A DNA stretch of 64,000 nt from Macrostomum hystrix (lineage: Eukaryota > Animalia > Platyhelminthes). The stretch is taken from NCBI GenBank assembly GCA_950097015.1, contig CATNEN010000007.1, positions 4,030,001-4,094,000 of the forward strand. Direction: 5' to 3'. Shown piece by piece: positions 25,060-45,084 of this stretch (its first letter is position 1; each line of letters begins with the position of its first letter). Position numbers and translations under genes: made by a program. The notes below the pieces were generated by a model, which saw nothing but the letters and a program-made list of their open reading frames with translations, had not been told where the DNA came from and ran no database searches.

Positions 25060-26007
25060 ATAAGTATAGTGGGTGAGGAGTAGAGTGGGTGAGAAGTAGA
25101 GTGGGTGAGGAGTAGAGTGGGTGAGGAGTAGAGTGGGTGAGAAGTAGAGTTGGTGAGAAGTAGAGTGGGTGAGAAGTAGAGTGGGTGAGAAGTAGAGTGG
25201 GTGAGAAGTAGAGTTGGTGAGAAGTAGAGTGGGTGAGAAGTATAGTGGGTGAGAAGCAGAGTTGGTGAGAAGTAGAGTGGGTGAGAAGTAGAGTGGGTGA
25301 GAAGTAGAGTTGGTGAGAAGTATAGTGGGTGAGAAGTAGAGTTGGTGAGAAGTAGAGTGGGTGAGAAGTATAGTGGGTGAGAAGCAGAGTTGGTGAGAAG
25401 TAGAGTTGGTGAGAAGTAGAGTGGGTGAGAAGTAGAGTTGGTGAGAAGTAGAGTGGGTGAGAAGTAGAGTGGGTGAGAAGTATAGTGGGTGAGAAGTAGA
25501 GTTGGTGAGAAGTATAGTAGGTGAGAAGTAGAGTGGGTGAGAAGTATAGTGGGTGAGAAGAGAGTTGGTGAGAAGTAGAGTTGGTGAGAAGTATAGTGGG
25601 TGAGAAGTAGAGTTGGTGAGAAGTAGAGTTGGTGAGAAGTATAGTGGGTGAGAAGTAGAGTTGGTGAGAAGTAGAGTTGGTGAGAAGTAGAGTGGGTGAG
25701 AAGTAGAGTTGGTGAGAAGTAGAGTGGGTGAGAAGTAGAGTGGGTGAGAAGTATAGTGGGTGAGAAGTAGAGTTGGTGAGAAGTATAGTAGGTGAGAAGT
25801 AGAGTGGGTGAGAAGTATAGTGGGTGAGAAGAGAGTTGGTGAGAAGTAGAGTTGGTGAGAAGTATAGTGGGTGAGAAGTAGAGTTGGTGAGAAGTAGAGT
25901 TGGTGAGAAGTATAGTGGGTGAGAAGTAGAGTTGGTGAGAAGTAGAGTTGGTGAGAAGTATAGTAGGTGAGAAGTAGAGTGGGTGAGAAGTATAGTGGGT
26001 GAGAAGT
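25060..26007. repeat. 16-bp purine-rich minisatellite (GTGGGTGAGAAGTAGA)
   Basis: About 58 copies with GTTGG/TATAG variants. Both 361-aa ORFs are artefacts. Confidence 0.96.
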
Positions 26008-26892
26008 TGAATAGGTAGCGTGCAACAAAGTCAGCGCATGGTTGGAAAACAAAATACCACGGAGCAGTTAAAGAGCACATGTGCACGCAGGATGCGAGTA
26101 ACAGTGGACTCTATAGCTTCGAGAACGCTTTACTATAGTCGATACCTGCACATCAGAGCGTCCATACATCCATACGCTAATGCCCGTGCAGACAAGGATT
26201 TCGTTCTGAAGAGTATCTGGACTTGGCTATCGAGCCGGTAGTAAAAGGGTGGATCGAGTTGACCAGATATTACTCGAAATTTCATGAGCTGGTAAATTAA
26301 TTTCATCAATTTACTGCAGCAGAGCTAGACAGCAGAGAAAAGCAGCTAGGGTTACTAAATTAAAGCTAGGGGTCGAATAAATAAAAATATGCAAAATAAT
26401 ATATAGCAATATAATATATATCATGATTGCGTTAACTGCCATTGTGCGCATCACATGCAATCACATGCACATGCAATCTTCTCGTGGACAGTATGTGCAG
26501 CCAGATGCCTCTTTTTCGAAGTCAAACATCTTAACATCTTCATCTTCACACTATCATGAAATCGCTTATGTTTTATGTACATTTATTTGATATTCAAATC
26601 ATTAAATGATTAGGTAATTAATCATGTACAATCGCGTGTAGCTTCAGTTTCATATTTATATTCATTCGTGAATATTTAGAAATTCATTTGATAGCCACTG
26701 TGAATGAAATTAATTAACGTAATCGAAATGCGTCAGCAGTCCAGATAATGTAGAAATTATATCTGTCTGGCCGAATTAAATCTGTTGTGTGGTTCATTGG
26801 GAACACCGGAAAACTGAGTAAAAAATAAGTTATACGCTGCACGTCTCAGAAGCAAGGACCACTAGAAGAAGCTAAGAAGCTAAAGCTAAAGC

Positions 26893-27471
26893 CACCCGTA
26901 TATACACGTTAGGCGGTATAGAACACGGCGAAAACCGCCTAAAAGGCGGTCCATATCATGCTATATGATATCGTAGCATGATATAGACCGCCTTTTTTAA
27001 GCGCATAAAGGCCTTTTATGGCACAAATTTGAACAGCCGTTTCTGCTAATTTTTTTAGTTCGCTAATGCAAAATATCAATTTTACTACTTTTTAGTAACA
27101 ATAATTTTAGTGTCACTAGACAAATATTTGAATGGCTTAGTACAAGTGCTAACAGGTTATATTAATTTATGTAAGCCCAGGGCCTAGCTGTTTATTATTT
27201 TTTTATTTCCAAGTCATTGAAACATTAGACAGTCACATCATTATGGTATATATTACATATTAGTCCATTAGAACTCGAGAACAATAAGACTAAACTTTAA
27301 AAGTATGGCAGGAATAGGATGGCGCTCAGTTTTTAGCTAGGCCTATCGCCGCCTATGCCCTAGTTTAATATAGAAATAATATAGTAAAGCTTAAAACCTA
27401 TGCTAGCTGTATATTGAGCAGGCATAATAATTAGCTATTCTAGTATACTATTGCCTAGCTGCTAGCTGTAG
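26893..27471 (+). repeat. Left TIR (579 bp) of the giant element
   Basis: Matches the reverse complement of 44084-44656 by eye, except one internal block near 27267-27284. Confidence 0.95.
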
Positions 27472-27659
27472 GCCTGTAGCTAGCTAAATTGTATAACTAG
27501 TTGCTGGCATAAATATGTGTATTGTTTGTAATTATAGGCCTAAGTTTATAATTAGGTTCTAGCTATTCTACTACTATGTTGTGTTGTAGGTTAAAGCCAA
27601 TTGTTGCTTCAGAGGCTTTACTTGTTACCACTCCACTCCTTTGTGGCTTTTGCCACACT

Positions 27660-30150
27660 TTGATGGCCTTCACCATACCCTACTGGTCTTCACCATACCC
27701 TACTGGCATTCACCATACCCTACTGGCATTCACCATACCCTACTGGCATTCACCATACCCTACTGGCATTCACCATACCCTACTGGCATTCACCATACCC
27801 TACTGGCCTTCACCATACCCTACTGGCCTTCACCATACCCTACTGGCCTTCACCATACCTTACTGGCCTTCACCATACCCTACTGGCATTCACCATACCC
27901 TACTGGCATTCACCATACCCTACTGGCATTCACCATACCCTACTGGCATTCACCATACCCTACTGGCATTCACCATACCCTACTGGCATTCACCATACCC
28001 TACTGGCCTTCACCATACCCTACTGGCCTTCACCATACCCTACTGGCATTCACCATACCCTACTGGCCTTCACCATACCCTACTGGCCTTCACCATACCC
28101 TACTGGCATTCACCATACCCTACTGGCCTTCACCATACCCTACTGGCCTTCACCATACCCTACTGGCCTTCACCATACCTTACTGGCCTTCACCATACCC
28201 TACTGGCCTTCACCATACCCTACTGGCCTTCACCATACCCTACTGGCCTTCACCATACCCTACTGGCCTTCACCATACCCTACTGGCCTTCACCATACCC
28301 TACTGGCCTTCACCATACCCTACTGGCATTCACCATACCCTACTGGCCTTCACCATACCCTACTGGCCTTCACCATACCCTACTGGCATTCACCATACCC
28401 TACTGGCCTTCACCATACCCTACTGGCCTTCACCATACCCTACTGGCCTTCACCATACCTTACTGGCCTTCACCATACCCTACTGGCCTTCACCATACCC
28501 TACTGGCCTTCACCATACCCTACTGGCCTTCACCATACCCTACTGGCCTTCACCATACCCTACTGGCCTTCACCATACCCTACTGGCCTTCACCATACCC
28601 TACTGGCCTTCATACCCTACTGGCCTTCACCATACCCTACTGGCCTTCACCATACCCTACTGGCCTTCACCATACCCTACTGGCCTTCACCATACCTTAC
28701 TGGCCTTCACCATACCCTACTGGCCTTCACCATACCCTACTAGCCTTCACTATACCCTACTGGCCTTCAACATACCCTACTGGCCTTCACCATACCCTAC
28801 TGGCCTTCATACCCTACTGGCCTTCACCATACCCTACTGGCCTTCACCATACCCTACTGGCCTTCACCATACCTTACTGGCCTTCACCATACCCTACTGG
28901 CCTTCACCATACCCTACTGGCCTTCACCATACCCTACTGGCCTTCACTATACCCTACTGGCCTTCAACATACCCTACTGGCCTTCACCATACCCTACTGG
29001 CCTTCACCATACCCTACTGGCCTTCATACCCTACTGGCCTTCATACCCTACTGGCCTTCACCATACCCTACTGGCCTTCACCATACCCTACTGGCCTTCA
29101 CCATACCCTACTGGCCTTCACCATACCCTACTGGCCTTCACCATACCCTACTGGCCTTCAACATACCCTACTGGCCTTCACCATACCCTACTGGCCTTCA
29201 CCATACCCTACTGGCCTTCACCATACCTTACTGGCCTTCACCATACCTTACTGGCCTTCACCATACCCTACTGGCCTTCACCATGCCCTATTGGCCTTCT
29301 CTACTCCTTTGTGTCCTTCCCCACCTGGATGGATTTTCCTACACTTTTATGGCCTTCCCCACACCTTAATGGCCTTTACAACACCCTACTAGCCTTTTAA
29401 CTCCTATGTGGCTTTCTCCACTCCTATGTGGCCTTCCCCATACCTTGATGGCCTTTCCCACACCTCTGTGGCATTTCCCATACCCAGGTGGCCTTTCCAA
29501 CACATTTTTGGCTTTCACAACACCCTACTGGCCTTCTTCATTCCTATGTGGGCTTCCCCATATTGATGGCCTTTCCCACACCCAGGTGGCCTTCCCACAC
29601 CCTGCTGCCACATACTAATGGCCTTCCCCACATTACGCTGGCCTTCCTTACCCAACGCTGGCCTTCGCCACACTACGCTGCCCTTCCCCACACTACGCTG
29701 GCCTTCCTTACCCAACGCTGGCCTTCGCCACACTACGCTGGCCTTTCCCACACCTCTGTGGCCTTTCCCACACATTTTTGGCCTTCACAACACCCTACTG
29801 ACCTTATTCATTCCTATGTGGGCTTCCCCATATTGATGGCCTTTCCCACACCCAGGTGGCCTTCCCCACACCCTGCTGCCACATCCTAATGGCCTTTCCC
29901 ATACTACGCTGGCCTTCCCACACTGCGCTGGCCTTCCCCATACTACGCTGGCCTTTCCCACACCTCTGTGGCCTTTCCCACACCTCTGTGGTCTTTCCCA
30001 CACCTCTGTGGCCTTTCCCACACCTCTTTGGCCTTTCCCACACCCAGATGGCCTTCCCCACACCCTGCTGCCACATCCTAATGGCCTTCCCCACACTACG
30101 CTGGCCTTTCCCACACTACGCTGGCCTTCCCCTCACAACGCTAGCCTTTT
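27660..30150. repeat. 20-bp minisatellite (CCTTCACCATACCCTACTGG), homogeneous to ~29285 then degenerate
   Basis: About 80 homogeneous copies followed by diverged GGCCTTTCCCACAC units. The 597/583-aa ORFs are artefacts. Confidence 0.96.
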
Positions 30151-30408
30151 CCAAATTCTACTGCCTTTTCTTTCACTTTGGTGCCTTCCTGCCTTCTGAT
30201 TCTCTTCTTTACATACCCGTTTCTCGAGGCAACAGACTACACCCGGGTGAGTCTTGGACGCTTATCTTTTATTTTGTTAAAGCAATCTTCGCTTCGACCT
30301 GCTTTATGGATACGTTTTGTTTTGATTCTTTTATTGTCTTTGAAAATTAGTAATCATCAAATATTTATCCGATTATCCGACACTATTTGCTTATCTGATT
30401 TCAGCTAC

Positions 30409-33400
30409 ATGGGAAGACGAAAGCAGTCTATTGCCAAGACGTCAGTAAAGTATTGTACTCCTGCGTGTCGTAAGCGAGCACGTATCGTTCGAACTCCGTT
30501 GACATCGAAGTGTTGCATCCCGTGAGTATAATGGTTCAAAATTCAAATGATTCACAACTTTTCTTGACTACTCTTTCTTTCTATGCAGTGACACCCAGCC
30601 TGTATACAACAACGACCCAGAAGAAGAAGAATGGTTGGACATCCAAGACGACCCTATCGTTGCTGAAGAAGTCGAGACTCATGACGATCGTGCTCAATCG
30701 AAGTCCGCAAAGCCAAGCCGTTTTAAGACCTTTTGCAGCGAAGAAAACGACGCTTGGAATGAGTTATTTCAGTCAGGGGTCTTGACAGTCGGTTTAGCGG
30801 GTCACTACAACAAGCGCCCATGTGTCTTTTGCGGTTGCGAGACTGAAATATTCCGGTGCCTCAAGTGTCACTTACTATCGGTCTGCTCCACTTGCTTAGA
30901 TGCCCGCCATGCCCATATGCCGCCCCATGCTGTTCAACGCTGGAATGTAAGTTCGATACTATGCAGATCTGGTTTATAATTATGTTGTTTATATTGTATT
31001 ATGATATATATATTATATATTGTATTGAATGCATTTTTACATGAATTGGGTATTTTCTTATATATGATTTCTAGCGACAGTGCTCTTTTTTACCCGCTCG
31101 TCAGGGTGACTTCTTTGAGGCCGTTTCATCACAAGTGCGGCTTTCTCGGCTGTGCAGCTGTCTTCTCTACAGCGTACTTCCGGTCACTATTGTGACTGAA
31201 GATGGTGATTCTCGGCTGAATTCTGCATTTTTTCTGTTTGCAGTAGCTTACTTTGTTACTTAGCTTCTTAAAATAACAAGTCACGTGAATGTTCTGAGCT
31301 GCAATATGACGCCGATTGCTACAAAAACAAACGTCATATTTAGGGGACACTGATATTCTAGCAAGACTTTACTCAATCAGTATCAGTACTCACTACCTCA
31401 TTTCAGGAAGCGAACTAAAAGCAAATCTTGAGATGTGTACATGTACTACGTACCACGCAGCTCTTCTGGCACATGGATTTTGGCCCTTGCAGCCTCGACC
31501 AGAGGGCTCTCGGGAACTGACTGCCGTGTCTATTGAACTGCTTCTTCTAATTGATTCGCTGAATTGCAACTGCACAGCATCGTTGTCTTCGATTTGCAGT
31601 GCTATTAGGCGCTCCAAGAAGTCTATGTGGGCGCAGTCATCCACATCAGCAAGTTTTCATCAGACTGGCCCAACTTGCTATTATTTTGTAATAGGTGTGT
31701 CTTAACAATCAGCCATTCTCATACATTAAATTTTTAGATCGATCTATTTAGAGCGCTCAACGTAACTGGGGCGTTCCGGTCTTTCCGCCGTGTGCTGCAG
31801 AGCTTTCGTTGGGGAAGAAAGCCATCATGTCCAGCATGCTATGTGGTAAAAGATCTTCCTTTCATATATGTACGAGTATAACCATGCTCTCTCATTGCAA
31901 TACACTGATTGGCTTTTATTAAAATGTCATGTAACTTCTGTAGGTTGATTCGGACTCTGATGCCGAAAAGAGCAGTCCAATTTTCCTGATGATGGACGCC
32001 TGCTTCGGTCTCCGCCATCGCCGAACTGCAGGCAGAGCTGCTTTACCAACTCCAACAGGCTTTTTCGTTGACGTTGACCTTACTGATGATCACAATCCCT
32101 CTGCAGGACACTGTGCGAACTGGAGAGCGGGTGGAAGAGGTCAAACTCTAACGACTGCTGCAGACCGGGGCAAGCTAGACGTGTTTGGGGCCTTTGCTGG
32201 TTCCTGCAGACACTCTGCTATACGCTACCTGTCCGACGTTACTACTGCAGGCGAACGGTAACTAGTTGATTGTAAAAGAACTTTGTTGCAGGACTAATTA
32301 GTCCCATTTTTGAAATGGGTAGTGGCAGAGTGGTTATTGTTTTACTTTGTAACTTATTTTGTTTGCTAACTCTAGAGAGAGTTAGTGGGTTGGATAATAA
32401 GGAATGCCTAGCAGTTGGTGTGAGCTGTCTACGAATTAGAAAGGAGACTGACAGAATAATAGCGAGCAGAGATAACGAGAGCGAGAGAAACTGGGCGGAG
32501 TAAACAAGAAAAGTGCGGAGAATGAAGGAGTGTATGCTTAATTTTTTAAGTTCAAACTCTGATCAATTTAATCACCAGGCTCAACTACGCCACAGCAATG
32601 GTTGCCAAAATTTTGGGGGACGTTCCTGCAATGGTTCCCATTGTCGTGTCATACGATATTGGGTGCAAACTGGCTGGTCGGTTCAACGACACTCGGTTGC
32701 CATTCGCGATACCGGCGTTTCATACCTACGGGCACGTTCTGCGCTGTCAACTGACGTATGGAATTCGTTCTATTACCTCCGTTGGCTTGACGGATGGTGA
32801 AAGCGTAGAGAGAATCTGGGCAGATCTTCGACGCTTCAGCCCTCAGGTTAAAGAGATGTCGCATGACAATCGGCGCGAATTTCTCAATTACCTTGTCGAC
32901 AGCATGAATTTTCACTGCATTATAAATATAAGTATGGAAGTTATATCCGCTGATTAATTATTTGCATTTATATATTTCTCCATAGAATATTGAATTGATA
33001 TCTTATTGGGCCTTATTGTTCTCGTAACAAATATAGTTGCTAAAATTTCGCGTGAAAAATGCGGCAAGCAATTTACGCTACACATGTTTTTCTTTTTCAG
33101 CGACCTGGCTGAGTCACCGCCGAACAGTCGAAAAGAAGGCAGTGCAACAATTCGAAGCTGGCTTTGCTGCAATTCAAGCGCATCACAATGTGCACAGTGA
33201 GTCCTGACTCATTCCCCATTTTGACAGCTGGGTGAACTGAAGCAAAGCAGAGTTAAGTGTCTCGCTAAAGGACTCAAATTGTCGACCTTCAAGTTGTGAG
33301 TCCGACGCTCTAACCACCAGGCTACAACCCCATCATTAAATATTAATAATATATATATTACATTAAATATCCGCTGTATCTCCATTAGTGACTCTTGAAG

Positions 33401-34089
33401 AATTCCTTCAAGAGACAGCCGATTGGAGGCAAGAGCTGATCAATGTGCTATCTGCGCGTGAGTCATCCTCGCCCAAGTCTGAGACTATCCGAAAACTATT
33501 TGGCATTGCATGCGAGCGGCAGTATCTACTCGAACATGCGGCAACAGAGCGTGGTCAGCGTATGAACAGGCTACTTCGAGTAGCCACAGACAAGCTGCTC
33601 CGCAAGACAAAGATAGTCTGTTCAAGGTTTAACAGCAAAAATCCAAGGGACCTACTTGATTGGAATGACTTCATTTCGACAGACGCCTCTGGCTTCGAGC
33701 AGCTTATAAATGGAGGCACTGTCGGTGTCGAGGTCCTAACTCACAAGGTGCAAGCCGTAAAACTTCGCGATCTGTACCTTCGATGCTCGGAAGAGTCGCG
33801 CCTGGTGACTTCAGAGGCAAAGCGTGTTTATAATTTTCTTTCTGCTGCCGTTCTAACCGTGACCTCAGAGTTGCAAGCCGCCCGAGATAGCAACAGCCCA
33901 CTCACTGCGGTATTATCTCTTCGGCTAAGTGGTATATTGCGCTTACGCCATGCTCATGAAGCCGCTTTCCCGTTTGGAGCAATGGCGGAGACACAACCGG
34001 ATTCTGAGTCGTGCGATTCTCATGACAGTGAATCGGAAAATTCGCAAGCTTTATTGTCTGCCAGTGAGGATGACTCCGAGTTTTCTTAA
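30409..34089 (+). CDS. KDZ (Kyakuja-Dileera-Zisupton) transposase with N-terminal Cys clusters; 9 exons, ~816 aa, apparently intact
   Basis: Exons 30409-30521, 30589-30946, 31075-31204, 31407-31687, 31738-31842 (or 31845), 31944-32257, 32579-32931, 33101-33196, 33389-34089 sum to 2451 nt (817 codons). Motifs: CVFC..FRCLKC..CSTCLDARHAHMPPHAVQRWN, CSC..CTC..LLAHGFWP, SCPAC, LMMDACF (D), GSCRH..GER, VSYDIGC (D), AFHTYGH..C, GLTDGESVERIW (E). Confidence 0.88.
33205..33331 (-). mobile_element. tRNA-derived SINE fragment in intron 8 of the KDZ transposase
   Basis: The minus strand begins with a tRNA-like head (GTAGCCTGGTGGTTAGAGCGTCGGACTCACAACTTGAAGGTCG), followed by a non-tRNA body. Confidence 0.5.
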
Positions 34090-35467
34090 CGATTCCATCA
34101 AAGCTTGCGAATTTTCTGCTGTCAAATTTTCTGTCAATTTTCTGCTGTCAAAATTTCTCCTGAGAAGCAGCTTGCTGTTTTGTTTATTGTTAATACAATT
34201 GAAACAAAACTTTTCAGCCACGAATTTCAGCATTAATTTTTCCCAAGCTATGCACGACCCAACCTCTATAATCTCCGGAAAGCCGTCAGCACATCCCGCC
34301 ACAAAGACATCTGTCTCTCGGCCAATGAGAGAGCGCCGTCTTCCTATCCCATCTCCCCATACTCCCCATCTGCTTCCCCATGCGCCTTCAGACCCGTCTC
34401 CCCACAGTGTATCCCGTTTTACCATCATAATTTGAGCTGTGGAATGTTTCATTTTTTTCTGGCTCTTCCTCAACATCCCTTCCCCAGCTTCCCCCCAATC
34501 CTCATCGATTTTACGTGAGAATTCCGCGCATAGGTTTCTGGCACAGTGCCCAGTTAATAAATAAAGCCGAATGATTTGATGTACTGCTTTTTCCTATTTC
34601 TAAAGCACTTTGCTAATTGCTCATCCTGCATTAATCACTACTGAGACAATTATTTTTATTAAAACCGAAGATCACTAAGTCTGACCTTTCTCTCAGGTCC
34701 AATCGAGTTATTATGTGCAAGCTGTGTTTAAATGTGGAATCGACGTGTCAATTGTTATTTATTTATTCGTTTTTCGCCACAACAGTACAAGTCTCCAAAA
34801 AAAACCAACAAACGTAGCTTTTACTGCTTCGTCAAACCAGCTATCGAGAATTTCAAAGCTTTATAGAGAGAGAAGGACAAAGAGCGACTAGCTTAATAAT
34901 TTCATACATGTATTAAATTGCTAGTTCTTACAATGGTAAAGAGATTTACCCTCATGCCACTTGTTCAGTAAACCGTTCTACGTTCAGTATACTTTTAAAT
35001 TACTATAGCTCAATAACCCAAATGATACTGTCAAAACACGAGCTACGATCGAACATATTCACATCATTCGCGCCGAGTACTACGCCCATAGCCAGTGTAG
35101 ATGTTGCTGCTCACACTGCTGTCGAGGACTAGCATGGAACTGGTGCTAATTAGGTTTTTGACTACCTGCATTTACGAGGGTATACTGCATGCAGTACTAA
35201 GCGTATAAATTTTTGTAGTAAAAGGGAATTTTTCGACTTGGCTATATAGGATATTTTACGCAATTCAGAAATTTCGAATTCAAAGATCCTCAGAGAAGCA
35301 GAAGAAAGTGTCTGTAGTATTCAGTAGCACACATCTTCCCAGACGAAGAATCAAATGGTTTCATCAGAAATTGTCGACGATCTATTTAGTGTATTTTCTC
35401 CAGCGGGGGTCTGTACTCAAAATTGACGGGGCGGAGGAGGCCGTACTCACATTCTAACCTCAGGCCT

Positions 35468-35738
35468 ATGGAGGAAAGAATAGAATGGAGTGCCAATCTG
35501 AGCCGGTTCTTTTTGTTTCGCTCGATCTTCACTTTTAACATCCCGTTTCCGGCCGTTCCTTCCTATTGGCTCGTGACTGCCATAGACGAGCTCGTTTTCG
35601 TCCCCCTCTGAAAGTAATATCGTGGACTATAATGCTAGTGGAAAAAACGAGTTCGTCTATGGCAGTCACGAGCCAATAGGAAGGAACGGGAACGGGATGT
35701 TGAAAGTGAAGATCGAGCGAAACAAAAATAACCGGCTC
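35468..35738. mobile_element. MITE-like hairpin element with ~95-bp inverted arms
   Basis: Arms at ~35500-35598 and ~35644-35738 (GAGCCGG...CCGGCTC). Direct repeat CTCAGGCCT at 35459-35467 and 35738-35746. Confidence 0.7.
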
Positions 35739-38237
35739 TCAGGCCTCAGTGTATGGGTGCAGAGGGTGCCGCGAGTCAAGCTGCTATTGAGGGGTCAGAT
35801 TTTTTCAATACTGATCGAATTGCGTAAATTACATTGGGCTGGGGCAGAGTTGGCTGGGTGCCAAATTCCATTCACGAAATCTGCAAGCAGGCTGCTCAAA
35901 TTTAACTTTTTGAAAATTCGCACCTCGGCATTGGCGGAGAGACAAATGTACTTACAATGTAGAGCAACCTCCCTGTCCTTAAATAAGTCCTGTCCTCATT
36001 CTGAGTTCACCCAATTTAAAGTTCAGAGTTCTCTTCGAATTGCTAGAGTTTGATAGATGAAATTCGGGCGATGGGAGTTTGATCCCCTAACTTCTTTCGC
36101 AGGAGGAATTCCGCTCGTTCTTATATAAAAGTCAGCACCCTGTAAAGACGCCGCCATGCTTTTATAATATAACTCGTATAATAGACAGCACAGTCCATTT
36201 GCCCAAACGCTTGCCTAAAAAAACTTTCAACTCTTTCTCTTTCAACCTAGCTGCAATGGCCATTCTAACCCTAAGCGTCCACTAGTCAGTGCGCTAGCAG
36301 TGCGAACCCCACCTGTCTGCGTTATTGCTTATTCATATGTGATTTGCCACTTTTTGTAACTTGCACGTTGTGTGACTTTTTTAGTACGACTAAATCATAT
36401 ATGTTTGACGCGTGTCAGTTTTTACGTTTCTATAAATTATTTTTGTTTATTAGCCCAATTAGCTGAGGCCAACTGAATACTAAGCAAGTAAGCGCGCAAA
36501 AAGCCATCCATTTTTGGAGCAGAGGCACAGTCTGTGTTGTAGTTTACAAGTAAGGATAGCGGAACTGTGATCGAGCCGTCTTTACCGGCCCGTTCTATAG
36601 CGAATCATTCAAGAGAACCCATATGGAAGAAAACTACGACTGCCGAGTCCGATTGATTTGTCTCTTAGGTAGAAATAGAGTTGAGTTAAATTGAGAAATT
36701 AAAAGAAAATTATACCCGCTTTATAAAGGATAATGGCCAGAGTTGTCGGTGGGTGTGTAGCGGAAGCTGCGAGGGCGCCAGGCGAGAGCTGCCGCGAAGA
36801 CAGCAGGGGCGAGGGATCCGGATCGATGCTCCTGCACACTAGCTGGGGACGTTATGGCAGGAGCTACTAAGCAACAGAGGTGCTAACCTAATGTAACTGC
36901 TGCAGGCGTGTGGTGGCTGGCCCACCGCGGGGTCGTCCCTAAATCAGGTGGGCTGAACAGGTTTCTGGATGAGTTCGCAACGTCCAGACCATTCGCTGGA
37001 ATCCGCTGCACCGCTAGCAAAACGCAGAGAAGGATTTCTTGTCCATCTCAAATATATTGAAGCTGTATACATAGATGTACATGCGTATTTCTCCATTTCG
37101 TGTTCGTATGATGATGAAAAACTGTAGTGAATTTAAGTAGTCATAGTAACGCGTGGAGGGCCAGATTCTTACATTAGCTACTGCCGCAAAGGTATGCAGC
37201 GCCCCCTTCACGCAGGCTTGGTGCTCTCCTTCCAGCTGGCGCACTTTCAGCGCCGATTTTCGTGCCTTTTCAGCACCCACTTGGTGCCGTATAGGCGCTG
37301 ATTTGGCGTCACTTGAGCGCCTATAAACACAATTGGCGCCGTTTGCGCTACCTAACCGAAAATCCTGGCTACGCCCCTGGTGCTGATTGGTGTGCCAGGT
37401 CATAGACAACCCGATAGCGGTCACTTATTCAGCTATGACTTTGAGATCAACCAGTAGAGCCACCAACACGGCAGCCCCTAAATGCTTGCCAACTGGCTGG
37501 CCCTGCAGAGGTCCTAAAGTTTCCAAAAACGAGAGCCCAAACACGTGTTTCGAAAACTAAAAAAAAATAATTACAAGTCCGAACAAGTGAACCGTCCAAT
37601 CGCTGATCGATATCAAAATCGCTCCAATGAAAAATAACAGTAGCAAAGGATAAAGTATTTTTTATATTACTTTTGTAATTAAATATATTTTACTAATTAC
37701 TAGCATCAACGTTACTATTATTTGAGGGGACTTCATTATATTAAAAGTCTTTGAAAAATAACATAAATGGCTGTATAAAATGCAAATTTATGTTAGAAAA
37801 GTATGTTTTAAAAGGTATCTGTATAAAACTTTGAGAAGGTGGACAAAAGAAGCAATGGAAGCTGAAATGGCAACACTAAATAGCGTGAATTGCATGCAGT
37901 AAAGAAACAGCTGTAGGTCAACTAGGTTGTAAAACAGTAAAGGGCTGTGATTCCTGTGAAATAATTCACAGAAATTTAATTACCGGCTGAAAGTACGGTG
38001 ATCCCAACAGAAACAAACACTTGAGCTAAAAGAGATTCCATAAGGAATCGATTATACGAGGGGTTTATCATTTTGCTGCATTGAACTTTTCAATTGATTG
38101 TTTGTTTACCACTGCTACGAAATTCGAAAATTTTACTGTTAAAAGTTCTATAGATATACTTTATAAAATTTTAAATGCCGGACGGAGCGTTGAATCGTAG
38201 GTTATCATTATCCTTAACAGATACGTGGTTAGACTTA

Positions 38238-39060
38238 TGAGGGACAATCAAAAAGTTCTTTCACTGCCTTTTTTCAGCGCATGGGGCTTGCCTCAAACAC
38301 AGACAAATTGTGTCCCTTGGATTCACCATTTCCATGGAGGCAAATGTGACTTCGATGGTGAAGCTCGCAGTCGGAGACTTAGGATCTCCACCACTCAGTG
38401 TCGTCCACGAGGACAGTTGAGTGACTGTTGCTGAGATAGCAGAGGCCTGTGGCATCAGTTATGGCTGCACAGCCCATCCTACGGCTCAGTTGAAAATATC
38501 GAAGGTTTTTGCCAGATGTGTGCAGAAACTCCTTACTTCACTGATGCAGCGCAACAGGGCGCAGCAGCTGATTCACATTATTCAATGCCGCCAAGAGGAG
38601 TTTATTATGTCGTGACAGGGGATAAGTCGATATTTTCGCAGCTGAACCCACTCCACTGAAGGACAAGGCGACACCATAGATGAAGAAGCAGGTGGGCGCC
38701 ATCTTTTGGATTCGCTGGGAGTGCTGTTGATTGAGTGGCTGCCTGAGAAGCGGGGTCACCGTAAACTCCTACTCCACCTGAATGTCGATATCAAGGAAAA
38801 GAGGCTTGATAATGCCACCAGCGCTAGCCCATGACAAAGCTTCGGACAATGCGCAGGCAGACACCTGCGTTCCGTCCCACAGCTTTATCACACTGCTCAT
38901 CGCCAGAGCTGTCCCCTCAGAATTTGGAGGTGGCAGCTCTCTAGGTCCAGAAGCTGGTAATTTCGCTTCGTGGTGCAAACACCCAGGTGAAGAATGGTAC
39001 GCTGAAGGCATCAACTAACAACCAGAGCGCAGTGTCTCACTGCGCAAGAACCTTTTTGAG
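38238..39060 (+). mobile_element. Degenerate mariner-like transposon nested in the giant element
   Basis: Fragmented motifs across frames: TVAEIAEACGISYG, KVFARCVQKLLT (cf. WVPKLLT), VVTGDKS (first D), DNA. Many stops and frameshifts; only partial TIR similarity. Confidence 0.7.
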
Positions 39061-39147
39061 GGTTTAGGTCTTTAGGATGATTACAGTTACATAATCGTAG
39101 AAAATCGATTTCCATAGCTTTAAAAAAACTGTTTATTCATTACTCAT

Positions 39148-41209
39148 TTAATAATCCACCACTACTATTGTTTCTTGGCTGCTACTCTGGACCGGTTGCA
39201 CAGCGGTCCTGCCGACTTTGATCGGTTGCACAGCTGTCCCGCTGACTTTGACCGGTTGCACAGCTGTCCCGCCGACTTTGACCGGTTGCACAGCTGTCCC
39301 GCCGACTTTGACCGGTTGCACAGCTGTCCCGCCGACTTTGACCGGTTGCACAGCTGGAGCTGTCCCGCCGACTTTGACCGGTTGCACAGCTGGAGCTGTC
39401 CCGCCGACTTTGACCGGTTGCACAGCGGTCCTGCCGACTTTGACCGGTTGCACAGCGGTCCTGCCGACTTTGACCGGTTGCACAGCTGTCCCGCCGACTT
39501 TGACCGGTTGCACAGCTGTCCCACCGACTTTGACCGGTTGCACAGCTGGAGCTGTCCCGCCGACTTTGACCGGTTGCACAGCTGGAGCTGTCCCGCCGAC
39601 TTTGACCGGTTGCACAGCTGTCCCGCCGACTTTGACCGGTTGCACAGCGGTCCTGCCGACTTTGACCGGTTGCACAGCTGTCCCGCCGACTTTGACCGGT
39701 TGCACAGCTGTCCCACCGACTTTGACCGGTTGCACAGCTGTCCCGCCGACTTTGACCGGTTGCACAGCTGTCCCACCGACTTGGACTAACGCATGTGAGT
39801 CCCTGCTCATTCCCGGTAGCACAGGTGAGTCGCTGTTCGTTCCCGGTAGCACAGGTGAGTCGCTGCTCGTTCCCGGTAGCACAGGTGAGTCGCTGCTCGT
39901 TCCCGGCAGCACAGGTAGATCGCTGCTCGTTCCCGGCTGAAGTGGTGAGTCGCTGTAGAAAGTGACTTCACTGATCTTTTTTTCAAATTTTATTTGGGCC
40001 CTGGCATCCCAGACTTTTTGAAGCTCTGTTTTTGAGAGCTTTTGTGGGTGAATATCACTTCGAACTCCGGCCGGCCAGTGAATCCATCGACCGTACAGTG
40101 CAACTTTTCCAAATTGCAACTGCCGTCTGCCAATTGCTCTTTCTAAAAGTAGAAATAAAAGCGTGTTTATGAGCATAATTGAAACTAGCAATGTTTATAA
40201 TTTTGTACGTGATTTACTTGCAACTTAATATAACGGAATTTCAGTTGTTGCAATTATCTAATGTAATATTCGTAATTCTCAAACATAGCATAGCCTTGCA
40301 ATCATTTTAACACGGACGAGAGTCCGTGTTAAAGTACCAGAAATTAATACGAGTGGAAAAACGATGATGTGGCTTCGAATAGGACCCAGGCATGCGATTG
40401 TCAGCCCGTACTTACTAAACTTGTTCTGCAGCATATTGCTGACAGCAATGCGCAAGGTAGCCGCAGTCTTAGGCCGAGAAGCAGAAGCAGACGACACGCA
40501 CGATTGAAAAGCCAAAAAAATGTTCGATTTTAGATAAACTGTGAATAACTAAGATTAAAAATTTATTTGAATACTGTCAGTAAACAAGTACCTGCGATTT
40601 TACGAGATACTTACTGAGGCGACATTCGCTCGCTCACAGAAGCCTACGACTTCCTGCGATTCATACACGGTAGTGGCACCTTCAGCTTTGGAATGCAGCA
40701 GCACGATAACGTGGTAGCCTGCATTATCGGCTGAATCGACCTTGTAGTGAAGGCATACATTGAGATTAGCAACAAAGTTCATAATTGCCTAAGGGAGTAT
40801 ACTACGTGCATGAATGCATGCATTCGAACTTTATTGCTTACGATGCTGTTAGCCATGCTAACCAGCTTCTTCCGCTGAAAAGAGGCGGTATCTGTGCGTT
40901 CTGCGGCTTGGGCACGCAAGGCTTCCTTCCCCTGCTTGTCAAGCAAAGCATAGCGCTCGCGAAGGCCGCTGACTTGATCTGAAATTTAGGATTACCATTC
41001 GAGCTTAAAGATCTCATAAGCATTAAAAAATTTGAGAGCTAAAGTGACACTGTTTCTTAAACTATTTTATGTTGAATGTGGCATCTGAGTGAGTGGATTG
41101 AATAAATTTAAATCTGAATTAAATGCATACCAACAACGTTTAAACTAGGGTCGTAATTAATTCGCTCAAATACGTTCCAAGCACTAGGCCTTCTAGCAGA
41201 ACGTGACAT
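39148..41209 (-). CDS. Transposon-borne accessory gene: N-terminal HMG-box-like region, unknown central domain, repetitive C-terminus (~505 aa)
   Basis: Phase-consistent exons 41209-41131, 40978-40842, 40788-40615, 40548-40416, 40142-39148 sum to 1518 nt. The N-terminus MSRSARRPSAWNVFERINYDPSLNVVDQVSGLRERYALLDKQGKEALRAQAAE resembles HMG-box helices. Confidence 0.72.
39185..39960. repeat. 30/36-bp tandem repeats inside the last exon of the accessory gene
   Basis: GACCGGTTGCACAGCTGTCCCGCCGACTTT units (encoding GGTAVQPVKV) and a second 30-bp unit (encoding SSDSPVLPGT). Unit lengths are multiples of 3. Confidence 0.9.
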
Positions 41210-41363
41210 CTGAAATTTTAAAGAACCAATACCAGCTTTTACATAGCGCAAAAATCTAGAGACTTATATTGATAAGTCCTAAGTCTTCCTTTAGACTAAT
41301 TCCTTAGGTTACTTGTTATAGTAATCTAATAGCTTATAATAAGTACTTATAGTCGTCATACTT

Positions 41364-42716
41364 CGGGTGTGTCATAAGTAATGTCACTGAGGGTAAAACA
41401 GACCAACTAACAATCGCAGATGAACGAAACTGTATCAATCAACAACATAGTGTCCCCCAATATCAATCACCCTCTGGCAGTGCTCGTACAGCTTCTCTAC
41501 CTCAGCCTGCAGGTGTTTTTCCTCCAGCTGTCGGAACCAGTGCAACGCGGCTTCTTTGACCTCATCATGGTTTGTGAAACTTCTCTGGGAAAAGTCTGCA
41601 TTAGCCATTTAAAGAGAAACCTGTCGCACAAGTTGAAGTCTGGGCTGTAGGGACTCTGCCAGAGCAGGTTTACTCGCCGTCCAGCCAGAAAATCCGAAAC
41701 AGCCTGACAGGTGTGGGGCCGTGCGTTGTCCATCTGCCACAGAACTTCGTTCAGGTGAATCGGGTTTGACCGGAGCGTGCGCCAGAGGTTCCCAGTGTGT
41801 CGGACAAAGTCGATGAAGTACTGGCCATCGACCTTGGTGTTTGGCGGAGTTGTACAGATGGAGACTCGTTTGTTTGGCGTGAATGCCACCAGCAGCATGG
41901 TCTTCTTGTCTGAGATAGACCTCCTGGTCACAGTCAGCCTGGAGTCCCCAGCTCCCAGCCAGCAGCGATTGTCTGCCTTGCTGCTTTTGCCATCCAGGTG
42001 GAGCCAGGTCTCATCCTCAACAACCAGGCAGTTTAGGATGTCATCCAAGCCCCGGCTGCTGAACACCTTGAGGATCTGATTGGCGCAGTTCACACGGGCC
42101 TGACGTTGGTCCGCAGTGAGGTCATGGGGCACCCAGACCGAGCAGACGTTTCGGAGATGGAGATCCTCTGTCAAGATATGATGGACTGTCTTGAAATCAA
42201 TCTCCAAGCAGTCCGCTAGCTCCCTGACAGACTGCCGCGGGTCTTCCTTGACCAGGTCGCTGATGACTTCGATGTTCTCTATTGTCCTGGTTGAACATGG
42301 TCGTCCAGATCTGGCGGCATCTCCCAATTCGAACCCAGGATCAGTAAAGTTCTGAAACCACCTGTAAATTGTCCTGCGAGTTGGGCAGTTGTCTGGCAGT
42401 GTGTTCCGGAGATCCTCCTCTACTTCAAGTGCAGATTTTCCAAGCTTGAAGCGAATGAAAGCATTGAACTGGATGTGCATCTTGTCGTGATTCATGTTGA
42501 GTTTTGCTCGTTGCAAAAAGAAGATTTCATCGCATTGCGCTTGCTAAATCTGATTAACACATTCTTGCGACAGTTTTGGCCATAGACATTAAAATTGCTG
42601 CTCAGGTGTGGTGGCAACTTCTCAATAAATGTACTTTCAGAATATAATATATTTGGATGATTATTGCTTTGGGTTCCCGCACAACAACCACAGTGACATT
42701 ACTTATGACACACCCG
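41364..42716 (-). mobile_element. Mariner (DD34D) transposon, 1353 bp, nested in the giant element
   Basis: TIRs CGGGTGTGTCATAAGTAATGTCACTG and CAGTGACATTACTTATGACACACCCG. TA at the right flank; TT at the left flank. Confidence 0.93.
41435..42516 (-). pseudogene. Mariner transposase with a single frameshift near the C-terminus
   Basis: HTH region, WVPHDLT, VEDETW (D), MDNARPH (D) and YSPDFNLCD (D, 34 residues after the second D). After FKWL the canonical C-terminus (..CQRVIDIGGHYVVD, stop 41435-41437) continues in another frame at ~41600. Confidence 0.88.
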
Positions 42717-42779
42717 TAGTATAATGGAAATATATATTAAAATAAGCTTCCGTGAGTGACCAGGTTGTGGCATACATAC

Positions 42780-43330
42780 ATTCGCCTGGAGCACCAAGGT
42801 GTGCAAAAGGCCATCGGGTAAGTGGATGGCCAGATTGAGAAGGCTAACTGTATCAGGGATAGGCCATCAGGGTATGGGGAAGACCACCAGGGTTTGGGAA
42901 AGGTCATCAAGGTGTGTGGATGGCCATCAATGTGTGGTGAAGGCAACCAGGGTGTGGGAAAGGCCAGCAGGGTGTGGGGAAGGCCACCAGGGTGTGGGAA
43001 AGGCCACCAGGGTGTGGGAATGGCCATTAAGGTGCAGGGATGACCAGCAGAATGAAGTAGAGGCCATCACGAGGTGTGGTGAAGTCCAGCAGGGTGTGGG
43101 GAAGGCCAGCAAGGTGTGGGAAAGACTATCAAGGAATAGTAGTAGGGTATAAGGCACTCATTGTGCCAGCAGGGTATAGGAAAGGCCAATAGGACATAGG
43201 AATAGGTGCTAGGGCATAGGAAACATTATCAGGGTATGTGGAAGGCCAACAGGGTCAAAAATGCTAGCAGGATATAGAAAAGGCCAGCAGGGTATTTAAT
43301 AGCTGGCAGGATTTAGGGAAGGCAAGCATG
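42780..43330. repeat. Degenerate ~20-bp minisatellite (AGGCCAGCAGGGTGTGGGA-like), inverse of the left subterminal array
   Basis: Its reverse complement resembles the units at 29300-30150. Confidence 0.85.
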
Positions 43331-44083
43331 ATATAGGTTTATAAGAAAGATGCATCTAATGTAAGTGATAAAATATATAAAATTACTAATAATATACTAT
43401 ATACAAAAGACAACAGTACTATTTTATTTTGAATATTGGTTATCACTATAGTTTATAGTACATGATTGACTATGACCCATAGCATAGTAATAAAGATGGC
43501 ATAGTTTTCACTAGGAAAAAATTTGGGGGTCAATTTTTGGGCCAACTGTATGCCATCTATGCTTCTTTGCCAACTGTTTCTTTGTACTGTTTCTAAGAAA
43601 ATAGTCATGATGTGAACAGTGATTAAATATAGTGTACACCTTTTAGAACTGTACTCTGTTCTACTGTGGTGTGCTTTGCTATTGTTATTGTTGTTGTGCC
43701 CCAGGGGCCTTAGTGTGCCATGATTGTGTGCTGAGCATACTAGGGACCCTTATGTATAGAATTTTCTATGGCAGTGCTTATCCCCACAGTGCCATAAAAT
43801 TTTTTGTCTTATTCCTATGGTACTGTAGGAATAATTTCCTGCTTATCTGGACAGCACACTAACAATTATAGAAATATATTTTTATATACTTCAAGAAGAC
43901 ACCGTATTAGTTAACTAATTGCAAAAAAAATCTGAAAATTTTAATTTGTTTAGGCCCTACTTGCTTTTAAAAATGGGAAGAAAAGAAGAAAATTACAAAA
44001 AATGATATCACAGTAAAATCACAGTAAAATGATAGATGATAGGACAGCTATCTTGTCAGTGTGCCAAGCAGAAGGCACTCATT

Positions 44084-44656
44084 CTACAGCTAGCAGCTAG
44101 GCAATAGTATACTAGAATAGCTAATTATTATGCCTGCTCAATATACAGCTAGCATAGGTTTTAAGCTTTACTATATTATTTCTATATTAAACTAGGGCAT
44201 AGGCGGCGATAGGCCTAGCTAAAAACTGAGCGCCATCCTATTCCTGCCATACTTTTAAAGTTTAGTCTTAAAAGTGCCAGCAGGACTAATATGTAATATA
44301 TACCATAATGATGTGACTGTCTAATGTTTCAATGACTTGGAAATAAAAAAATAATAAACAGCTAGGCCCTGGGCTTACATAAATTAATATAACCTGTTAG
44401 CACTTGTACTAAGCCATTCAAATATTTGTCTAGTGACACTAAAATTATTGTTACTAAAAAGTAGTAAAATTGATATTTTGCATTAGCGAACTAAAAAAAT
44501 TAGCAGAAACGGCTGTTCAAATTTGTGCCATAAAAGGCCTTTATGCGCTTAAAAAAGGCGGTCTATATCATGCTACGATATCATATAGCATGATATGGAC
44601 CGCCTTTTAGGCGGTTTTCGCCGTGTTCTATACCGCCTAACGTGTATATACGGGTG
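44084..44656 (-). repeat. Right TIR (573 bp) of the giant element
   Basis: Reverse complement of 26893-27471. Confidence 0.95.
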
Positions 44657-45084
44657 CTAAAGCACAGAAGCTATAACATTGATCAAGTCAAACTGGGATT
44701 ATAACAAAAGACAGCTCACTACGTGTTTAGATAAGACATAGTTTGTATTTATTTAATTCTAATGAAATGCTCTTTTACCACTCAATTAAACTTCCGCTGT
44801 AATAAGCTATCAATGCTTAGGCGCAGATGACAAAGATAATTTAGTGGCACGCATTTAACTTTATCGTTGTCCGTGAATTTGACTCTGTGGTCCTGAATTG
44901 AATTGCTACTGAAAATAACTCTAAACTTATTTGCAGTTTTATATTTTTATAAAACGTATAAGTCACACGCTTTTGAGCATTCTGTAAACAGAGAATTTTT
45001 CTGCTTAGTTTGTTTTCGACTTCTGAAGTTTTCCGAGTATATTTTTTGTTACTAAATTAAAATAAATAGTCTTCTTGGTTTAAG

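What the first reader, a model, noticed from the sequence alone, without database searches (positions are those of the whole stretch)
26893..44656. Giant, apparently intact two-gene KDZ transposon in an animal genome
Seen: a 17.76-kb unit bounded by 579/573-bp near-identical TIRs and a flanking direct repeat, containing a 9-exon transposase and a convergent 5-exon HMG-like gene. Established: KDZ (Kyakuja, Dileera, Zisupton) transposases are known mainly from fungi and, as Zisupton, from fish; fungal KDZ elements travel with TET/JBP and HMG-domain genes. Inference: a young, potentially active, poorly described animal lineage of this class with a fungal-style accessory gene.
Basis: partly seen in the sequence, partly recalled or inferred. 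Interest (0 to 1): 0.92.

Follow-up and report, generated by a model that had tools for sequence, protein, structure and literature searches.

The report
Two-gene KDZ jumping gene in flatworm
This is a complete 17.8-kb cut-and-paste jumping gene of the known KDZ class in a Macrostomum-type flatworm, and its intact enzyme gene travels with a second, expressed gene whose conserved part folds like the DNA-binding repeat of the human factor TFII-I.

Summary
Window 26893-44656 is a 17,764-bp element with 579/573-bp inverted ends. These are identical apart from one 18/12-nt patch. The termini read 5'-CA..TG-3' and a perfect 7-bp duplication (CTAAAGC) flanks them. Inside is an intact 9-exon, 807-aa KDZ transposase that keeps every strongly conserved core residue.

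A convergent 5-exon companion gene (462 aa) faces it. An RNA contig shows this gene carrying the Macrostomum spliced leader and spliced at three of four introns. The fourth intron is retained in that contig.

The same companion gene, with the same intron phases, lies downstream of a diverged KDZ transposase in M. lignano. A more diverged relative lies downstream of another. Its "HMG-like" head could not be tested. Its conserved middle domain is predicted to fold like a GTF2I (TFII-I) repeat.

The element also holds a nested, frameshifted mariner. Strand-polar 20-bp arrays sit inside both ends.

The 7-bp duplication and CA..TG ends match Kyakuja, not Zisupton or Dileera, which make 8-bp duplications.

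This scan had already reported related two-gene KDZ elements elsewhere in this genome. This is a well-bounded variant of a known class, not a new kind. Current activity is not shown.

The parts
26886..26892 (.). Left copy of the 7-bp target-site duplication, CTAAAGC
   Evidence: identical 7-mer directly against both termini; it cannot be extended to 8 bp.
26893..27471 (+). Left terminal inverted repeat, 579 nt, starting 5'-CACCCG
   Evidence: 374 + 187 nt are 100% complementary to the right arm; the terminal 32-mer is unique to the two ends.
27633..30148 (+). Left subterminal array of about 120 units of 20 bp (core GGCCTTYMCCAYACC), expanded like a satellite
   Evidence: tandem repeat finder: 82 units at 96% identity, then diverged units; 98 motif matches, all on the + strand.
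30409..34089 (+). KDZ transposase gene of 9 exons (30409-30521, 30589-30946, 31105-31204, 31407-31687, 31738-31845, 31944-32257, 32579-32931, 33101-33196, 33389-34089), encoding 807 aa
   Evidence: Pfam KDZ at 5e-25 and 4e-6, CxC1 at 1.9e-4. GT..AG introns, open frame, 45% identity to M. lignano P0151 over residues 55-769; all 37 columns conserved in at least 85% of 41 relatives are kept.
34090..39147 (.). 5-kb spacer between the two genes with no detectable coding domain; it holds a 240-bp palindrome at 35500-35738
   Evidence: no Pfam match for any of the open frames tested here (a selection of those of about 60 aa or more); inverted repeat; no Rfam family.
39148..41209 (-). Companion gene of 5 exons (41209-41131, 40978-40842, 40740-40615, 40467-40416, 40142-39148), encoding 462 aa. 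It has an HMG-like N-terminal motif (untested), a GTF2I-repeat-like domain spanning exons 4-5, and a C-terminal array of 10-residue repeats
   Evidence: an RNA contig carries the spliced leader at 41210 and joints 41131|40978, 40842|40740 and 40416|40142; the model, and a 461-aa M. lignano homologue with the same intron phases; fold searches.
39190..39955 (-). 30-bp tandem repeats inside the last exon of the companion gene (unit roughly GGTAVQPVKV)
   Evidence: the M. lignano homologue also ends in a repeat with a related core (TA..PV..G).
41361..42719 (-). Nested mariner element of 1,359 bp with about 29-bp inverted ends and a TA duplication. Its transposase frame is broken by a 1-nt deletion near 41602
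   Evidence: HTH_48 and DDE_3 both above the Pfam cut-offs; ends and TA; most copies in three runs carry one extra C behind 41602.
42856..43328 (-). Right subterminal array of the same 20-bp unit, in inverted orientation, about 20 degenerate units
   Evidence: 9 motif matches, all on the - strand; none elsewhere in the 64-kb window (0.03 expected).
43756..44083 (.). Short high-copy repeat lying against the inner edge of the right inverted repeat
   Evidence: word depth about 4,700 in run X1, against about 232 for the element interior, with loose ends at 43801, 43860, 44025 and 44072.
44084..44656 (-). Right terminal inverted repeat, 573 nt, ending ...CGGGTG-3'
   Evidence: an X1 contig crosses 44656 into the flank with no differences, and a contig from organism B matches up to exactly 44656 and then diverges.
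44657..44663 (.). Right copy of the 7-bp target-site duplication, CTAAAGC

Best explanation
This is a complete, autonomous-looking DNA transposon of the KDZ (Kyakuja-Dileera-Zisupton) class in a Macrostomum-type flatworm. Shown: the ends, the 7-bp duplication, an intact 807-aa transposase gene, and a second gene that is transcribed, spliced and spliced-leader-capped. That second gene is conserved next to diverged KDZ transposases. Inferred mechanism: the DDE-type transposase binds the long inverted ends, and probably the strand-polar 20-bp subterminal repeats. It excises the element and reinserts it with a 7-bp staggered cut. The companion protein has a predicted GTF2I-repeat-like DNA-binding fold, a possible HMG-like head and a repetitive tail. 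It most likely acts as a DNA-binding helper or regulator of end recognition or synapsis, as the Myb-like second protein does in PIF/Harbinger elements. Trans-splicing gives its mRNA a host-type 5' end, with a start codon directly at the junction. The nested mariner and the other inserts are passengers.
For: Ends and duplication. Terminus confirmed by an independent run and in a second organism. KDZ domain at 5e-25 plus the CxC1 cluster. Nine GT..AG exons, an open 807-aa frame colinear with a 787-aa M. lignano protein. All 37 highly conserved core columns kept, including D338, E424, D451, D497, E499 and E502. Companion gene: an RNA contig has three GT..AG joints. Its 24-nt 5' loose end plus the G at 41210 equals the last 25 nt of the published M. 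lignano spliced leader: with PMC8629364. The same 5-exon gene with intron phases 1,0,0,1, 461 versus 462 aa, lies convergent downstream of a KDZ gene in M. lignano locus L001. A homologue lies in L003. GTF2I-like fold: with the model of the M. lignano homologue (pLDDT 76.5), the ten best Foldseek PDB matches are ten different GTF2I domains (probability 0.99-1.00, TM 0.55-0.68), followed by a sharp drop. In an exhaustive alignment against 48,161 chains the two best are GTF2I domains at Z 10.7 and 9.7, and the next are NRF1 DNA-binding domains at Z 5.2 and 5.0. For the window's own 62-residue piece, the two best of 48,161 chains are also GTF2I domains (Z 4.0 and 3.5). Subterminal motif: 98 matches on + at the left and 9 on - at the right, none elsewhere.
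Against: No transposition event, empty site or polymorphism was seen. The X1 contig runs unbroken across the right junction. Transposase transcription was not examined; the one read-laying run went to the companion gene. In the only RNA contig, intron 3 of the companion gene is retained, which would stop translation at residue 118, before the GTF2I-like domain. Pfam does not recognise the GTF2I-like domain at E<=10, and a PDB profile search finds no GTF2I chain. The better model is of a homologue only about 25-30% identical to the window's protein, built from a 5-row alignment. The companion gene was not found within 10 kb of the KDZ genes in three other M. lignano loci. Any role for the companion protein or the arrays in transposition is inference.
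Confidence: 0.8

Rival explanations
1. The second gene is cargo or a captured host gene with no part in transposition. It is merely carried along, like the TET/JBP genes or unknown reading frames in fungal KDZ elements.
For: No biochemical link is shown. Three other M. lignano KDZ loci lack it within 10 kb. Fungal KDZ elements are reported to carry extra reading frames of unknown function (PMC11343200). The RNA contig retains intron 3.
Against: The same position, convergent orientation, exon number and intron phases are kept beside transposases only 45% identical. Both proteins stay open over about 460 aa. The predicted fold is that of a DNA-binding module.
Confidence: 0.2
2. The element is an immobile relic, or the gene pair has been domesticated by the host. 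The intact frames reflect host function rather than mobility.
For: No empty allele was seen in X1. A nested mariner sits in every copy seen. The genes are processed like host genes, with trans-splicing and many introns.
Against: The ends and the 7-bp duplication are perfect. Interior depth is about three times the flank depth, with copies differing by 3 letters and one 30-nt indel in 1.4 kb. Contigs carry the same end joined to other flanks, both in the same organism and in a second organism.
Confidence: 0.1
3. The structure is an assembly artefact: a collapsed or falsely joined palindrome that makes the two arms look identical.
For: 100% identity over 561 nt is unusual. The window's own long reads were not available.
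Against: The arms differ in an internal 18-nt versus 12-nt patch. Independent contigs cross the right end, both mariner junctions and the inner edge of the repeat. A second organism's contig ends its match exactly at 44656.
Confidence: 0.03

Closest known systems
Kyakuja elements of the KDZ class (fungal; Kojima 2025, PMC12730594)
   Same: KDZ transposase; 7-bp target-site duplication; 5'-CA..TG-3' termini; a second gene carried inside the element.
   Different: The described fungal families (Kyakuja-1_LB and -2_LB) have no inverted ends and carry a TET/JBP dioxygenase. This element has about 575-bp inverted ends, a GTF2I-fold companion gene, an animal host and many introns. Placement with named Kyakuja references was not tested.
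Zisupton (fish; also reported in other metazoans, algae and fungi) and Dileera
   Same: KDZ transposase domain; multi-exon transposase gene; inverted ends and a target-site duplication. Related proteins occur in fish, lancelets, echinoderms, molluscs and cnidarians (PMC9297572).
   Different: These make 8-bp duplications (PMC12730594); this element makes 7 bp. The SWIM finger described for Zisupton was not found in any exon. In my tree the Macrostomum proteins form their own group, apart from the fish, lancelet and echinoderm group.
Cryptococcus KDZ1-3 and KDZx1 (experimentally mobile 'gigantic' KDZ transposons; PMC11343200)
   Same: Large size (6.4-10.9 kb there, 17.8 kb here); long inverted ends (236 bp there); a KDZ + CxC transposase plus extra genes without recognised domains.
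   Different: An 8-bp duplication and the Dileera clade there. Mobility is proven there and not here. The extra genes there are uncharacterised, whereas here the partner has a predicted GTF2I-like fold and is conserved across families.
Two-protein DNA transposons such as PIF/Harbinger (transposase plus a Myb-like DNA-binding protein)
   Same: A transposase with a separately encoded, likely DNA-binding partner inside one element. This is the working analogy for how it functions.
   Different: An unrelated transposase superfamily and an unrelated partner fold. The partner's role here is inferred only.
GTF2I (TFII-I) repeat domain, Pfam PF02946
   Same: The predicted fold of the companion protein's conserved domain: a long helix, a strand, a helix and a strand. 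Ten different solved GTF2I domains are the best Foldseek matches, and VIA-align gives Z 10.7 and 9.7 for the two GTF2I representatives in its reduced chain set.
   Different: No sequence-level match to the Pfam model. A single domain in a transposon-borne protein, not a multi-repeat vertebrate transcription factor.

Membership tests
KDZ transposon class (Pfam PF18758 transposase) | KDZ transposase domain | tested here: met
   exon 7 piece at E 5e-25 (88.9 bits against a cut-off of 26.6, profile positions 100-217); exon 6 piece at E 4e-6 (27.0 bits, profile positions 3-98).
KDZ transposon class (Pfam PF18758 transposase) | N-terminal CxC cysteine cluster | tested here: inconclusive
   CxC1 at E 1.9e-4, but 22 bits is below the 26.9-bit cut-off (one exon scanned alone); the conserved Cys columns (C203, C315, C318, C377, C408) are all present.
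KDZ transposon class (Pfam PF18758 transposase) | Conserved acidic and other core residues intact | tested here: met
   37 of 37 columns conserved in at least 85% of 41 relatives are kept.
KDZ transposon class (Pfam PF18758 transposase) | Element bounded by termini with a target-site duplication | tested here: met
   Only one copy has both flanks in hand.
Kyakuja clade | 7-bp target-site duplication and 5'-CA..TG-3' termini (PMC12730594) | tested here: met
   CTAAAGC on both sides, with termini CACCCG...CGGGTG. A second Macrostomum family (L002/L003) also starts with 5'-CA.
Kyakuja clade | Transposase groups with named Kyakuja references in a tree | not testable with these tools
   No labelled Kyakuja, Dileera or Zisupton reference proteins could be fetched. 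In the tree of database hits the Macrostomum group is sister to Mucor proteins (SH-aLRT 91), with the root unknown.
Zisupton / Dileera clades | 8-bp target-site duplication | tested here: not met
   the repeat is 7 bp and cannot be extended.
Zisupton / Dileera clades | SWIM zinc finger in the transposase (Zisupton domain structure as given in PMC11343200) | tested here: not met
   no SWIM match in any exon piece at E<=0.1. Exons were scanned singly.
GTF2I repeat (PF02946), for the companion protein | Match to the Pfam sequence model | tested here: not met
   no family at E<=10 for the window, L001 or P0161 pieces; the profile finds no GTF2I chain in the PDB.
GTF2I repeat (PF02946), for the companion protein | GTF2I-repeat fold | tested here: met
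   the ten best PDB matches are all GTF2I domains (probability >=0.99). Z 10.7 (87 residues aligned) and Z 9.7 (73 residues, rmsd 2.4). GTF2IRD1 and GTF2IRD2 clusters at TM 0.68-0.71; the window's own piece gives Z 4.0 and 3.5, the two best of 48,161 chains. These are predicted models from shallow alignments.
HMG box, for the companion protein's head | Match to an HMG-box sequence model or fold | tested here: inconclusive
   exons 1 and 2 scanned singly match nothing. The joined exons have no reference and were not submitted. The resemblance (RRPSAWNVF... then ...QVSGLRERY) rests on memory of HMG boxes.
Tc1/mariner, for the nested element | Mariner transposase domains, short inverted ends and a TA duplication | tested here: met
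   HTH_48 at 27.0 bits (cut-off 24.1) and DDE_3 at 29.7 bits (cut-off 28.6); about 29-nt ends with TA on both sides.

The most novel reading that the evidence does not exclude
The GTF2I-fold companion protein may be an old, general partner of KDZ transposases, not a Macrostomum peculiarity. Structure and language-model searches also point to multi-member families of unnamed proteins in Basidiomycota, Mucoromycota and Mollusca, all lineages rich in KDZ elements. If so, the TFII-I 'I-repeat' of vertebrate transcription factors could descend from a transposon-borne DNA-binding protein.
Probability: 0.15. Interest if true: 0.8.

Novelty: new variant of a known kind. Interest (0 to 1): 0.55.

Why it matters
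KDZ elements are among the least characterised DNA transposons. Mobility has been shown only in fungi, and animal copies are mostly known as orphan 'uncharacterized proteins'. This copy gives one fully bounded animal element with both ends, its duplication and candidate binding-site arrays. It also shows a conserved, expressed second gene with a testable predicted DNA-binding fold. That makes the biochemistry of KDZ transposition directly approachable: which protein reads which repeat, and whether a helper is needed. It also offers a possible transposon origin for the GTF2I repeat. Macrostomum is a transgenic model, so an active endogenous cut-and-paste system would have practical use. Finally, it shows that public names for these proteins ('MULE domain', 'Photolyase/cryptochrome domain', 'DUF3677') are misleading.

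Tried and rejected
1. Homologue searches for the companion protein found little. Two word-index searches, with the window's and L001's last exon, gave nothing. The search with L003's exon gave only two M. lignano entries.

2. The HMG box could not be tested. Single exons give no Pfam or PDB hit. The joined sequence has no reference, so that step was left out, as the rules require.

3. The language-model search on P0161 gave scores under 0.9, so it counts as a lead only.

4. A small profile of the GTF2I-like domain and two motif scans found nothing in the one Mucor and one Tilletia genomic locus with flanks.

5. A transposase sub-clade could not be assigned by tree, because no named references were available.

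6. No tRNA and no Rfam family were found in the element. A tRNA-like look of part of transposase intron 8 was not borne out.

7. No third gene was found. No open frame tested in the 5-kb spacer has a Pfam match.

8. The right end of the M. lignano L002/L003 element could not be found. Similarity ends inside nested mariner copies.

9. The terminal 14-mer is absent from all fetched loci.

10. Reading 'young' from identical inverted ends was rejected as a method.
Full report
**Observation.** The repeat finder gives two inverted-repeat blocks, 26893-27266 with 44283-44656 (374 nt) and 27285-27471 with 44084-44270 (187 nt). Both are 100% complementary. An 18-nt patch on the left and a 12-nt patch on the right separate them and do not match. 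The termini read 5'-CACCCG...CGGGTG-3'. The seven bases outside each terminus are CTAAAGC (26886-26892 and 44657-44663). The repeat cannot be extended to eight. The left flank holds the motif twice in tandem, so the target was a short repeat. The terminal 32-mer occurs only at the two ends of the element in the window, against 0 expected by chance.

**Transposase.** Pfam finds the two halves of the KDZ transposase domain in neighbouring plus-strand frames (E 4e-6 and 5e-25). A CxC1 cysteine cluster lies upstream at E 1.9e-4, below the family cut-off for that single exon. An exhaustive search of 1.84 billion representatives gave 1,581 relatives. The named top hits are from Macrostomum lignano at 45-66% identity, and one further close hit comes from an unnamed public read assembly. 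Tblastn of these proteins marks six of the exon blocks. Reading the sequence around those blocks and between them gives nine exons with eight GT..AG introns and consistent phases. The frame of 807 codons is open from the ATG at 30409 to the stop at 34087-34089. The product is colinear with the 787-aa M. lignano protein P0151 over residues 55-769 at 45% identity. In an alignment of 41 relatives, all 37 columns conserved in at least 85% of rows are kept. These include D338, E424, D451, D497, E499 and E502 and the conserved cysteines and histidines. The gene looks intact. Its transcription was not examined.

**Companion gene.** On the minus strand an ATG at 41209 opens a gene for which I first drew five exons from splice signals. 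Contigs of public run X4 laid on 39956-45955 settle much of it.
- One 862-nt minus-strand contig joins 41131 to 40978, 40842 to 40740 and 40416 to 40142. Each skipped stretch ends GT..AG on the minus strand.
- At its 5' end the contig carries 24 letters that are not in the genome. Their reverse complement is CTGCGAAGACTCAATTTATTGCAT. Together with the G at 41210 this is the last 25 nt of the 35-nt spliced leader published for M. lignano (PMC8629364).
- X4 is therefore RNA. The gene is transcribed, trans-spliced at the AG directly before its ATG, and cis-spliced.
- The exon-3 acceptor lies at 40740, not where I first drew it.
- The stretch 40738-40416 is continuous in that contig, so the predicted intron 3 (donor GTAAGT after 40615) is retained. 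That form would stop at residue 118.

With intron 3 removed (acceptor after 40468, the only AG that keeps the frame in both allelic forms), the protein has 462 residues.

**Conservation of the pair.** I fetched the surroundings of five M. lignano KDZ genes.
- In locus L001 the transposase is 45% identical to ours. A convergent gene about 9 kb downstream can be read with the same five exons and the same intron phases (1, 0, 0, 1), giving 461 residues. It aligns with ours over the first 195 or so residues. Like ours, it then runs into a tandem repeat whose units share a core (TA..PV..G).
- In L003 the transposase is 37% identical. A further homologue lies convergent downstream and is in UniProt as P0161/P0162, under a misleading 'photolyase' name.
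- L002, L004 and L005 show nothing within 10 kb.

A gene that keeps its place, direction, exon plan and open frame beside such diverged transposases is a long-standing partner, not a recent passenger.

**What the companion protein is.** No exon matches Pfam or PDB sequences. From memory this does resemble helices 1 and 2 of HMG boxes. The joined exons have no reference, however, so I did not submit them. It remains untested.

The conserved stretch across exons 4-5 (LR..V...L..KF, then W..WP..V...P..L....L......I.F) could be folded by reference.
- The window's own 62 residues gave a weak model (pLDDT 65). In an exhaustive alignment to 48,161 solved chains, only three chains reached Z 2. The top two were GTF2I domains (Z 4.0 and 3.5).
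- A 96-residue model of the M. lignano homologue, with the window and L001 pieces in the alignment, reached pLDDT 76.5.
- Its ten best Foldseek matches in the PDB are ten different GTF2I domains (probability 0.99-1.00, TM 0.55-0.68, 73-90 columns). The list then falls to unrelated rows at probability 0.08 or lower.
- The exhaustive aligner gives GTF2I domains at Z 10.7 (87 residues) and 9.7 (73 residues, rmsd 2.4), followed by NRF1 DNA-binding domains at 5.2 and 5.0.
- The ESM Atlas search returns GTF2IRD1 and GTF2IRD2 clusters at TM 0.68-0.71. It also returns three unnamed Basidiomycota families at TM 0.63-0.72.

The domain therefore very probably has the GTF2I-repeat fold, although it is not a Pfam member by sequence. 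First readers elsewhere in this genome had guessed the same (s1-332707, s1-310553). I saw those notes only afterwards.

**Other contents.**
- A 1,359-bp mariner (41361-42719, minus strand) lies between the companion gene and the right array. It has about 29-nt inverted ends and TA on both sides, and HTH_48 and DDE_3 matches above the Pfam cut-offs. Its frame shifts near 41600. Most copies in three runs carry one more C behind 41602.
- X1 contigs at the element's own depth cross both mariner junctions, and no contig skips it. The mariner therefore sits in every copy seen.
- Inside the left end lies a 2.5-kb array of 20-bp units. Inside the right end lies a 0.45-kb array of the same unit in the opposite orientation. 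The 15-nt core matches 98 times on the plus strand at the left and 9 times on the minus strand at the right. It matches nowhere else in 64 kb, against 0.03 expected. Such polar subterminal repeats are what transposase-binding sites look like in other large DNA transposons; that reading is inference.
- 43756-44083 is a further high-copy insert.
- The 5 kb between the two genes shows no coding signal.

**Copies and host.** In DNA run X1 the interior of the element has word depth about 232 and the junction-bearing flank contig 74.7. The inverted ends have depth 435-717. This fits roughly three copies, although the tool warns that depth is not a copy number. Over 1.4 kb the X1 contig differs from the window by three letters and a 30-nt indel in intron 3. 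An X4 contig joins the right end to another flank. A contig of a second organism (X9) matches the right arm with 12 differences up to exactly 44656 and then diverges. The terminus is therefore confirmed and the family is present in a relative. No empty site was seen. The exact spliced leader, the M. lignano best hits and mariner copies at 83-90% DNA identity in M. lignano loci place the window in Macrostomum. That the closest M. lignano transposase is only 66% identical suggests another species of the genus (inference).

**Comparison with what is known.**
- KDZ proteins related to this one are in the databases for sea urchins, sea cucumbers, starfish, lancelets, a cavefish, molluscs, a nemertean, a priapulid and cnidarians, as well as fungi. 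Zisupton-type elements have been reported in nematodes (PMC9297572). An animal KDZ is therefore not new in itself.
- In my tree the Macrostomum proteins form one group (SH-aLRT 92) apart from the fish, lancelet and echinoderm group, with Mucor as neighbour. Without named references no clade can be assigned from it.
- Kojima (PMC12730594) gives 8-bp duplications for Zisupton and Dileera, and 7-bp duplications with CA..TG termini for Kyakuja. This element has the Kyakuja hallmarks, but with long inverted ends that the described fungal Kyakuja families lack.
- Mobile Cryptococcus KDZ elements are also large, with long inverted ends and extra genes of unknown function (PMC11343200).
- No paper in the held library mentions GTF2I together with KDZ, Zisupton or Kyakuja, and none links KDZ with HMG genes.

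**Verdict.** The finding is real and well bounded. It is a variant of a known class, and this scan has already reported related two-gene KDZ elements in the same genome (s1-368582, s1-278229, s1-253522, s1-258427).

- the 7-bp duplication and CA..TG signature;
- the polar subterminal arrays;
- RNA proof of trans-splicing and splicing for the companion gene;
- its conserved exon plan in M. lignano;
- fold-level evidence for a GTF2I-like domain.

What remains open:
- activity;
- transposase expression;
- removal of intron 3;
- the HMG-like head;
- any function of the companion protein.

Noticed in passing
window 41361-42719: A nested mariner with a TA duplication. The family is very abundant: word depth 3,400-10,000 in run X1 against about 232 for the host element. 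It is transcribed within other RNAs in X4. This copy has a 1-nt deletion near 41602 relative to most copies.
   Followed up: partly
window 43756-44083: A short high-copy repeat (depth about 4,700 in X1) inserted against the inner edge of the right inverted repeat. Its ends and family were not determined.
   Followed up: no
window 35500-35738: A 240-bp near-perfect palindrome (arms of 61 nt at 90% and 46 nt at 98% complementarity) in the spacer between the two genes. It could be a foldback or miniature element.
   Followed up: no
window 40543: The copies seen in runs X1 (DNA) and X4 (RNA) carry 30 extra letters here, inside intron 3 of the companion gene. The window's copy therefore has a 30-bp deletion relative to them.
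   Followed up: partly
window 44935-45268 (minus strand): A host transcript exon lies 279 bp from the right end of the element. It is seen in RNA contigs of X4 and X10 with the same splice continuation at 45268. The element sits just beyond the end of that contig.
   Followed up: no
window 25002-26000 and 46550-46925: Tandem arrays of 16-bp units (left of the element) and 19-21-bp units (right of it). The neighbourhood is rich in minisatellites.
   Followed up: no
window 51799-52815 (+), 62027-63004 (-), 7459-10251 (-): An intronless 339-aa reading frame with a FLYWCH zinc finger (E 3e-7), a 325-aa frame with a C2HC finger (E 3e-13), and a 930-aa coiled-coil frame.
   Followed up: no
proteins P0001, P0005, P0161 (M. 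lignano, UniProt): Public names are misleading. A KDZ fragment is called 'MULE domain-containing' and the companion protein 'Photolyase/cryptochrome alpha/beta domain-containing'. P0005, named 'DUF3677 domain-containing', is a chimera of a KDZ piece and the antisense frame of a mariner.
   Followed up: partly
L002:5002 and L003:5004: Two M. lignano copies of another KDZ family are 99.9% identical from a shared left terminus (5'-CATCAGTG) but have different flanks. This indicates recent transposition or duplication in that species. The right end was not found, because similarity ends inside nested mariner copies.
   Followed up: partly
ESM Atlas clusters: Unnamed multi-member protein families of Basidiomycota (52-193 members, 296-387 aa) share the GTF2I-like fold at TM 0.63-0.72. 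Whether they sit in KDZ elements is unknown.
   Followed up: no
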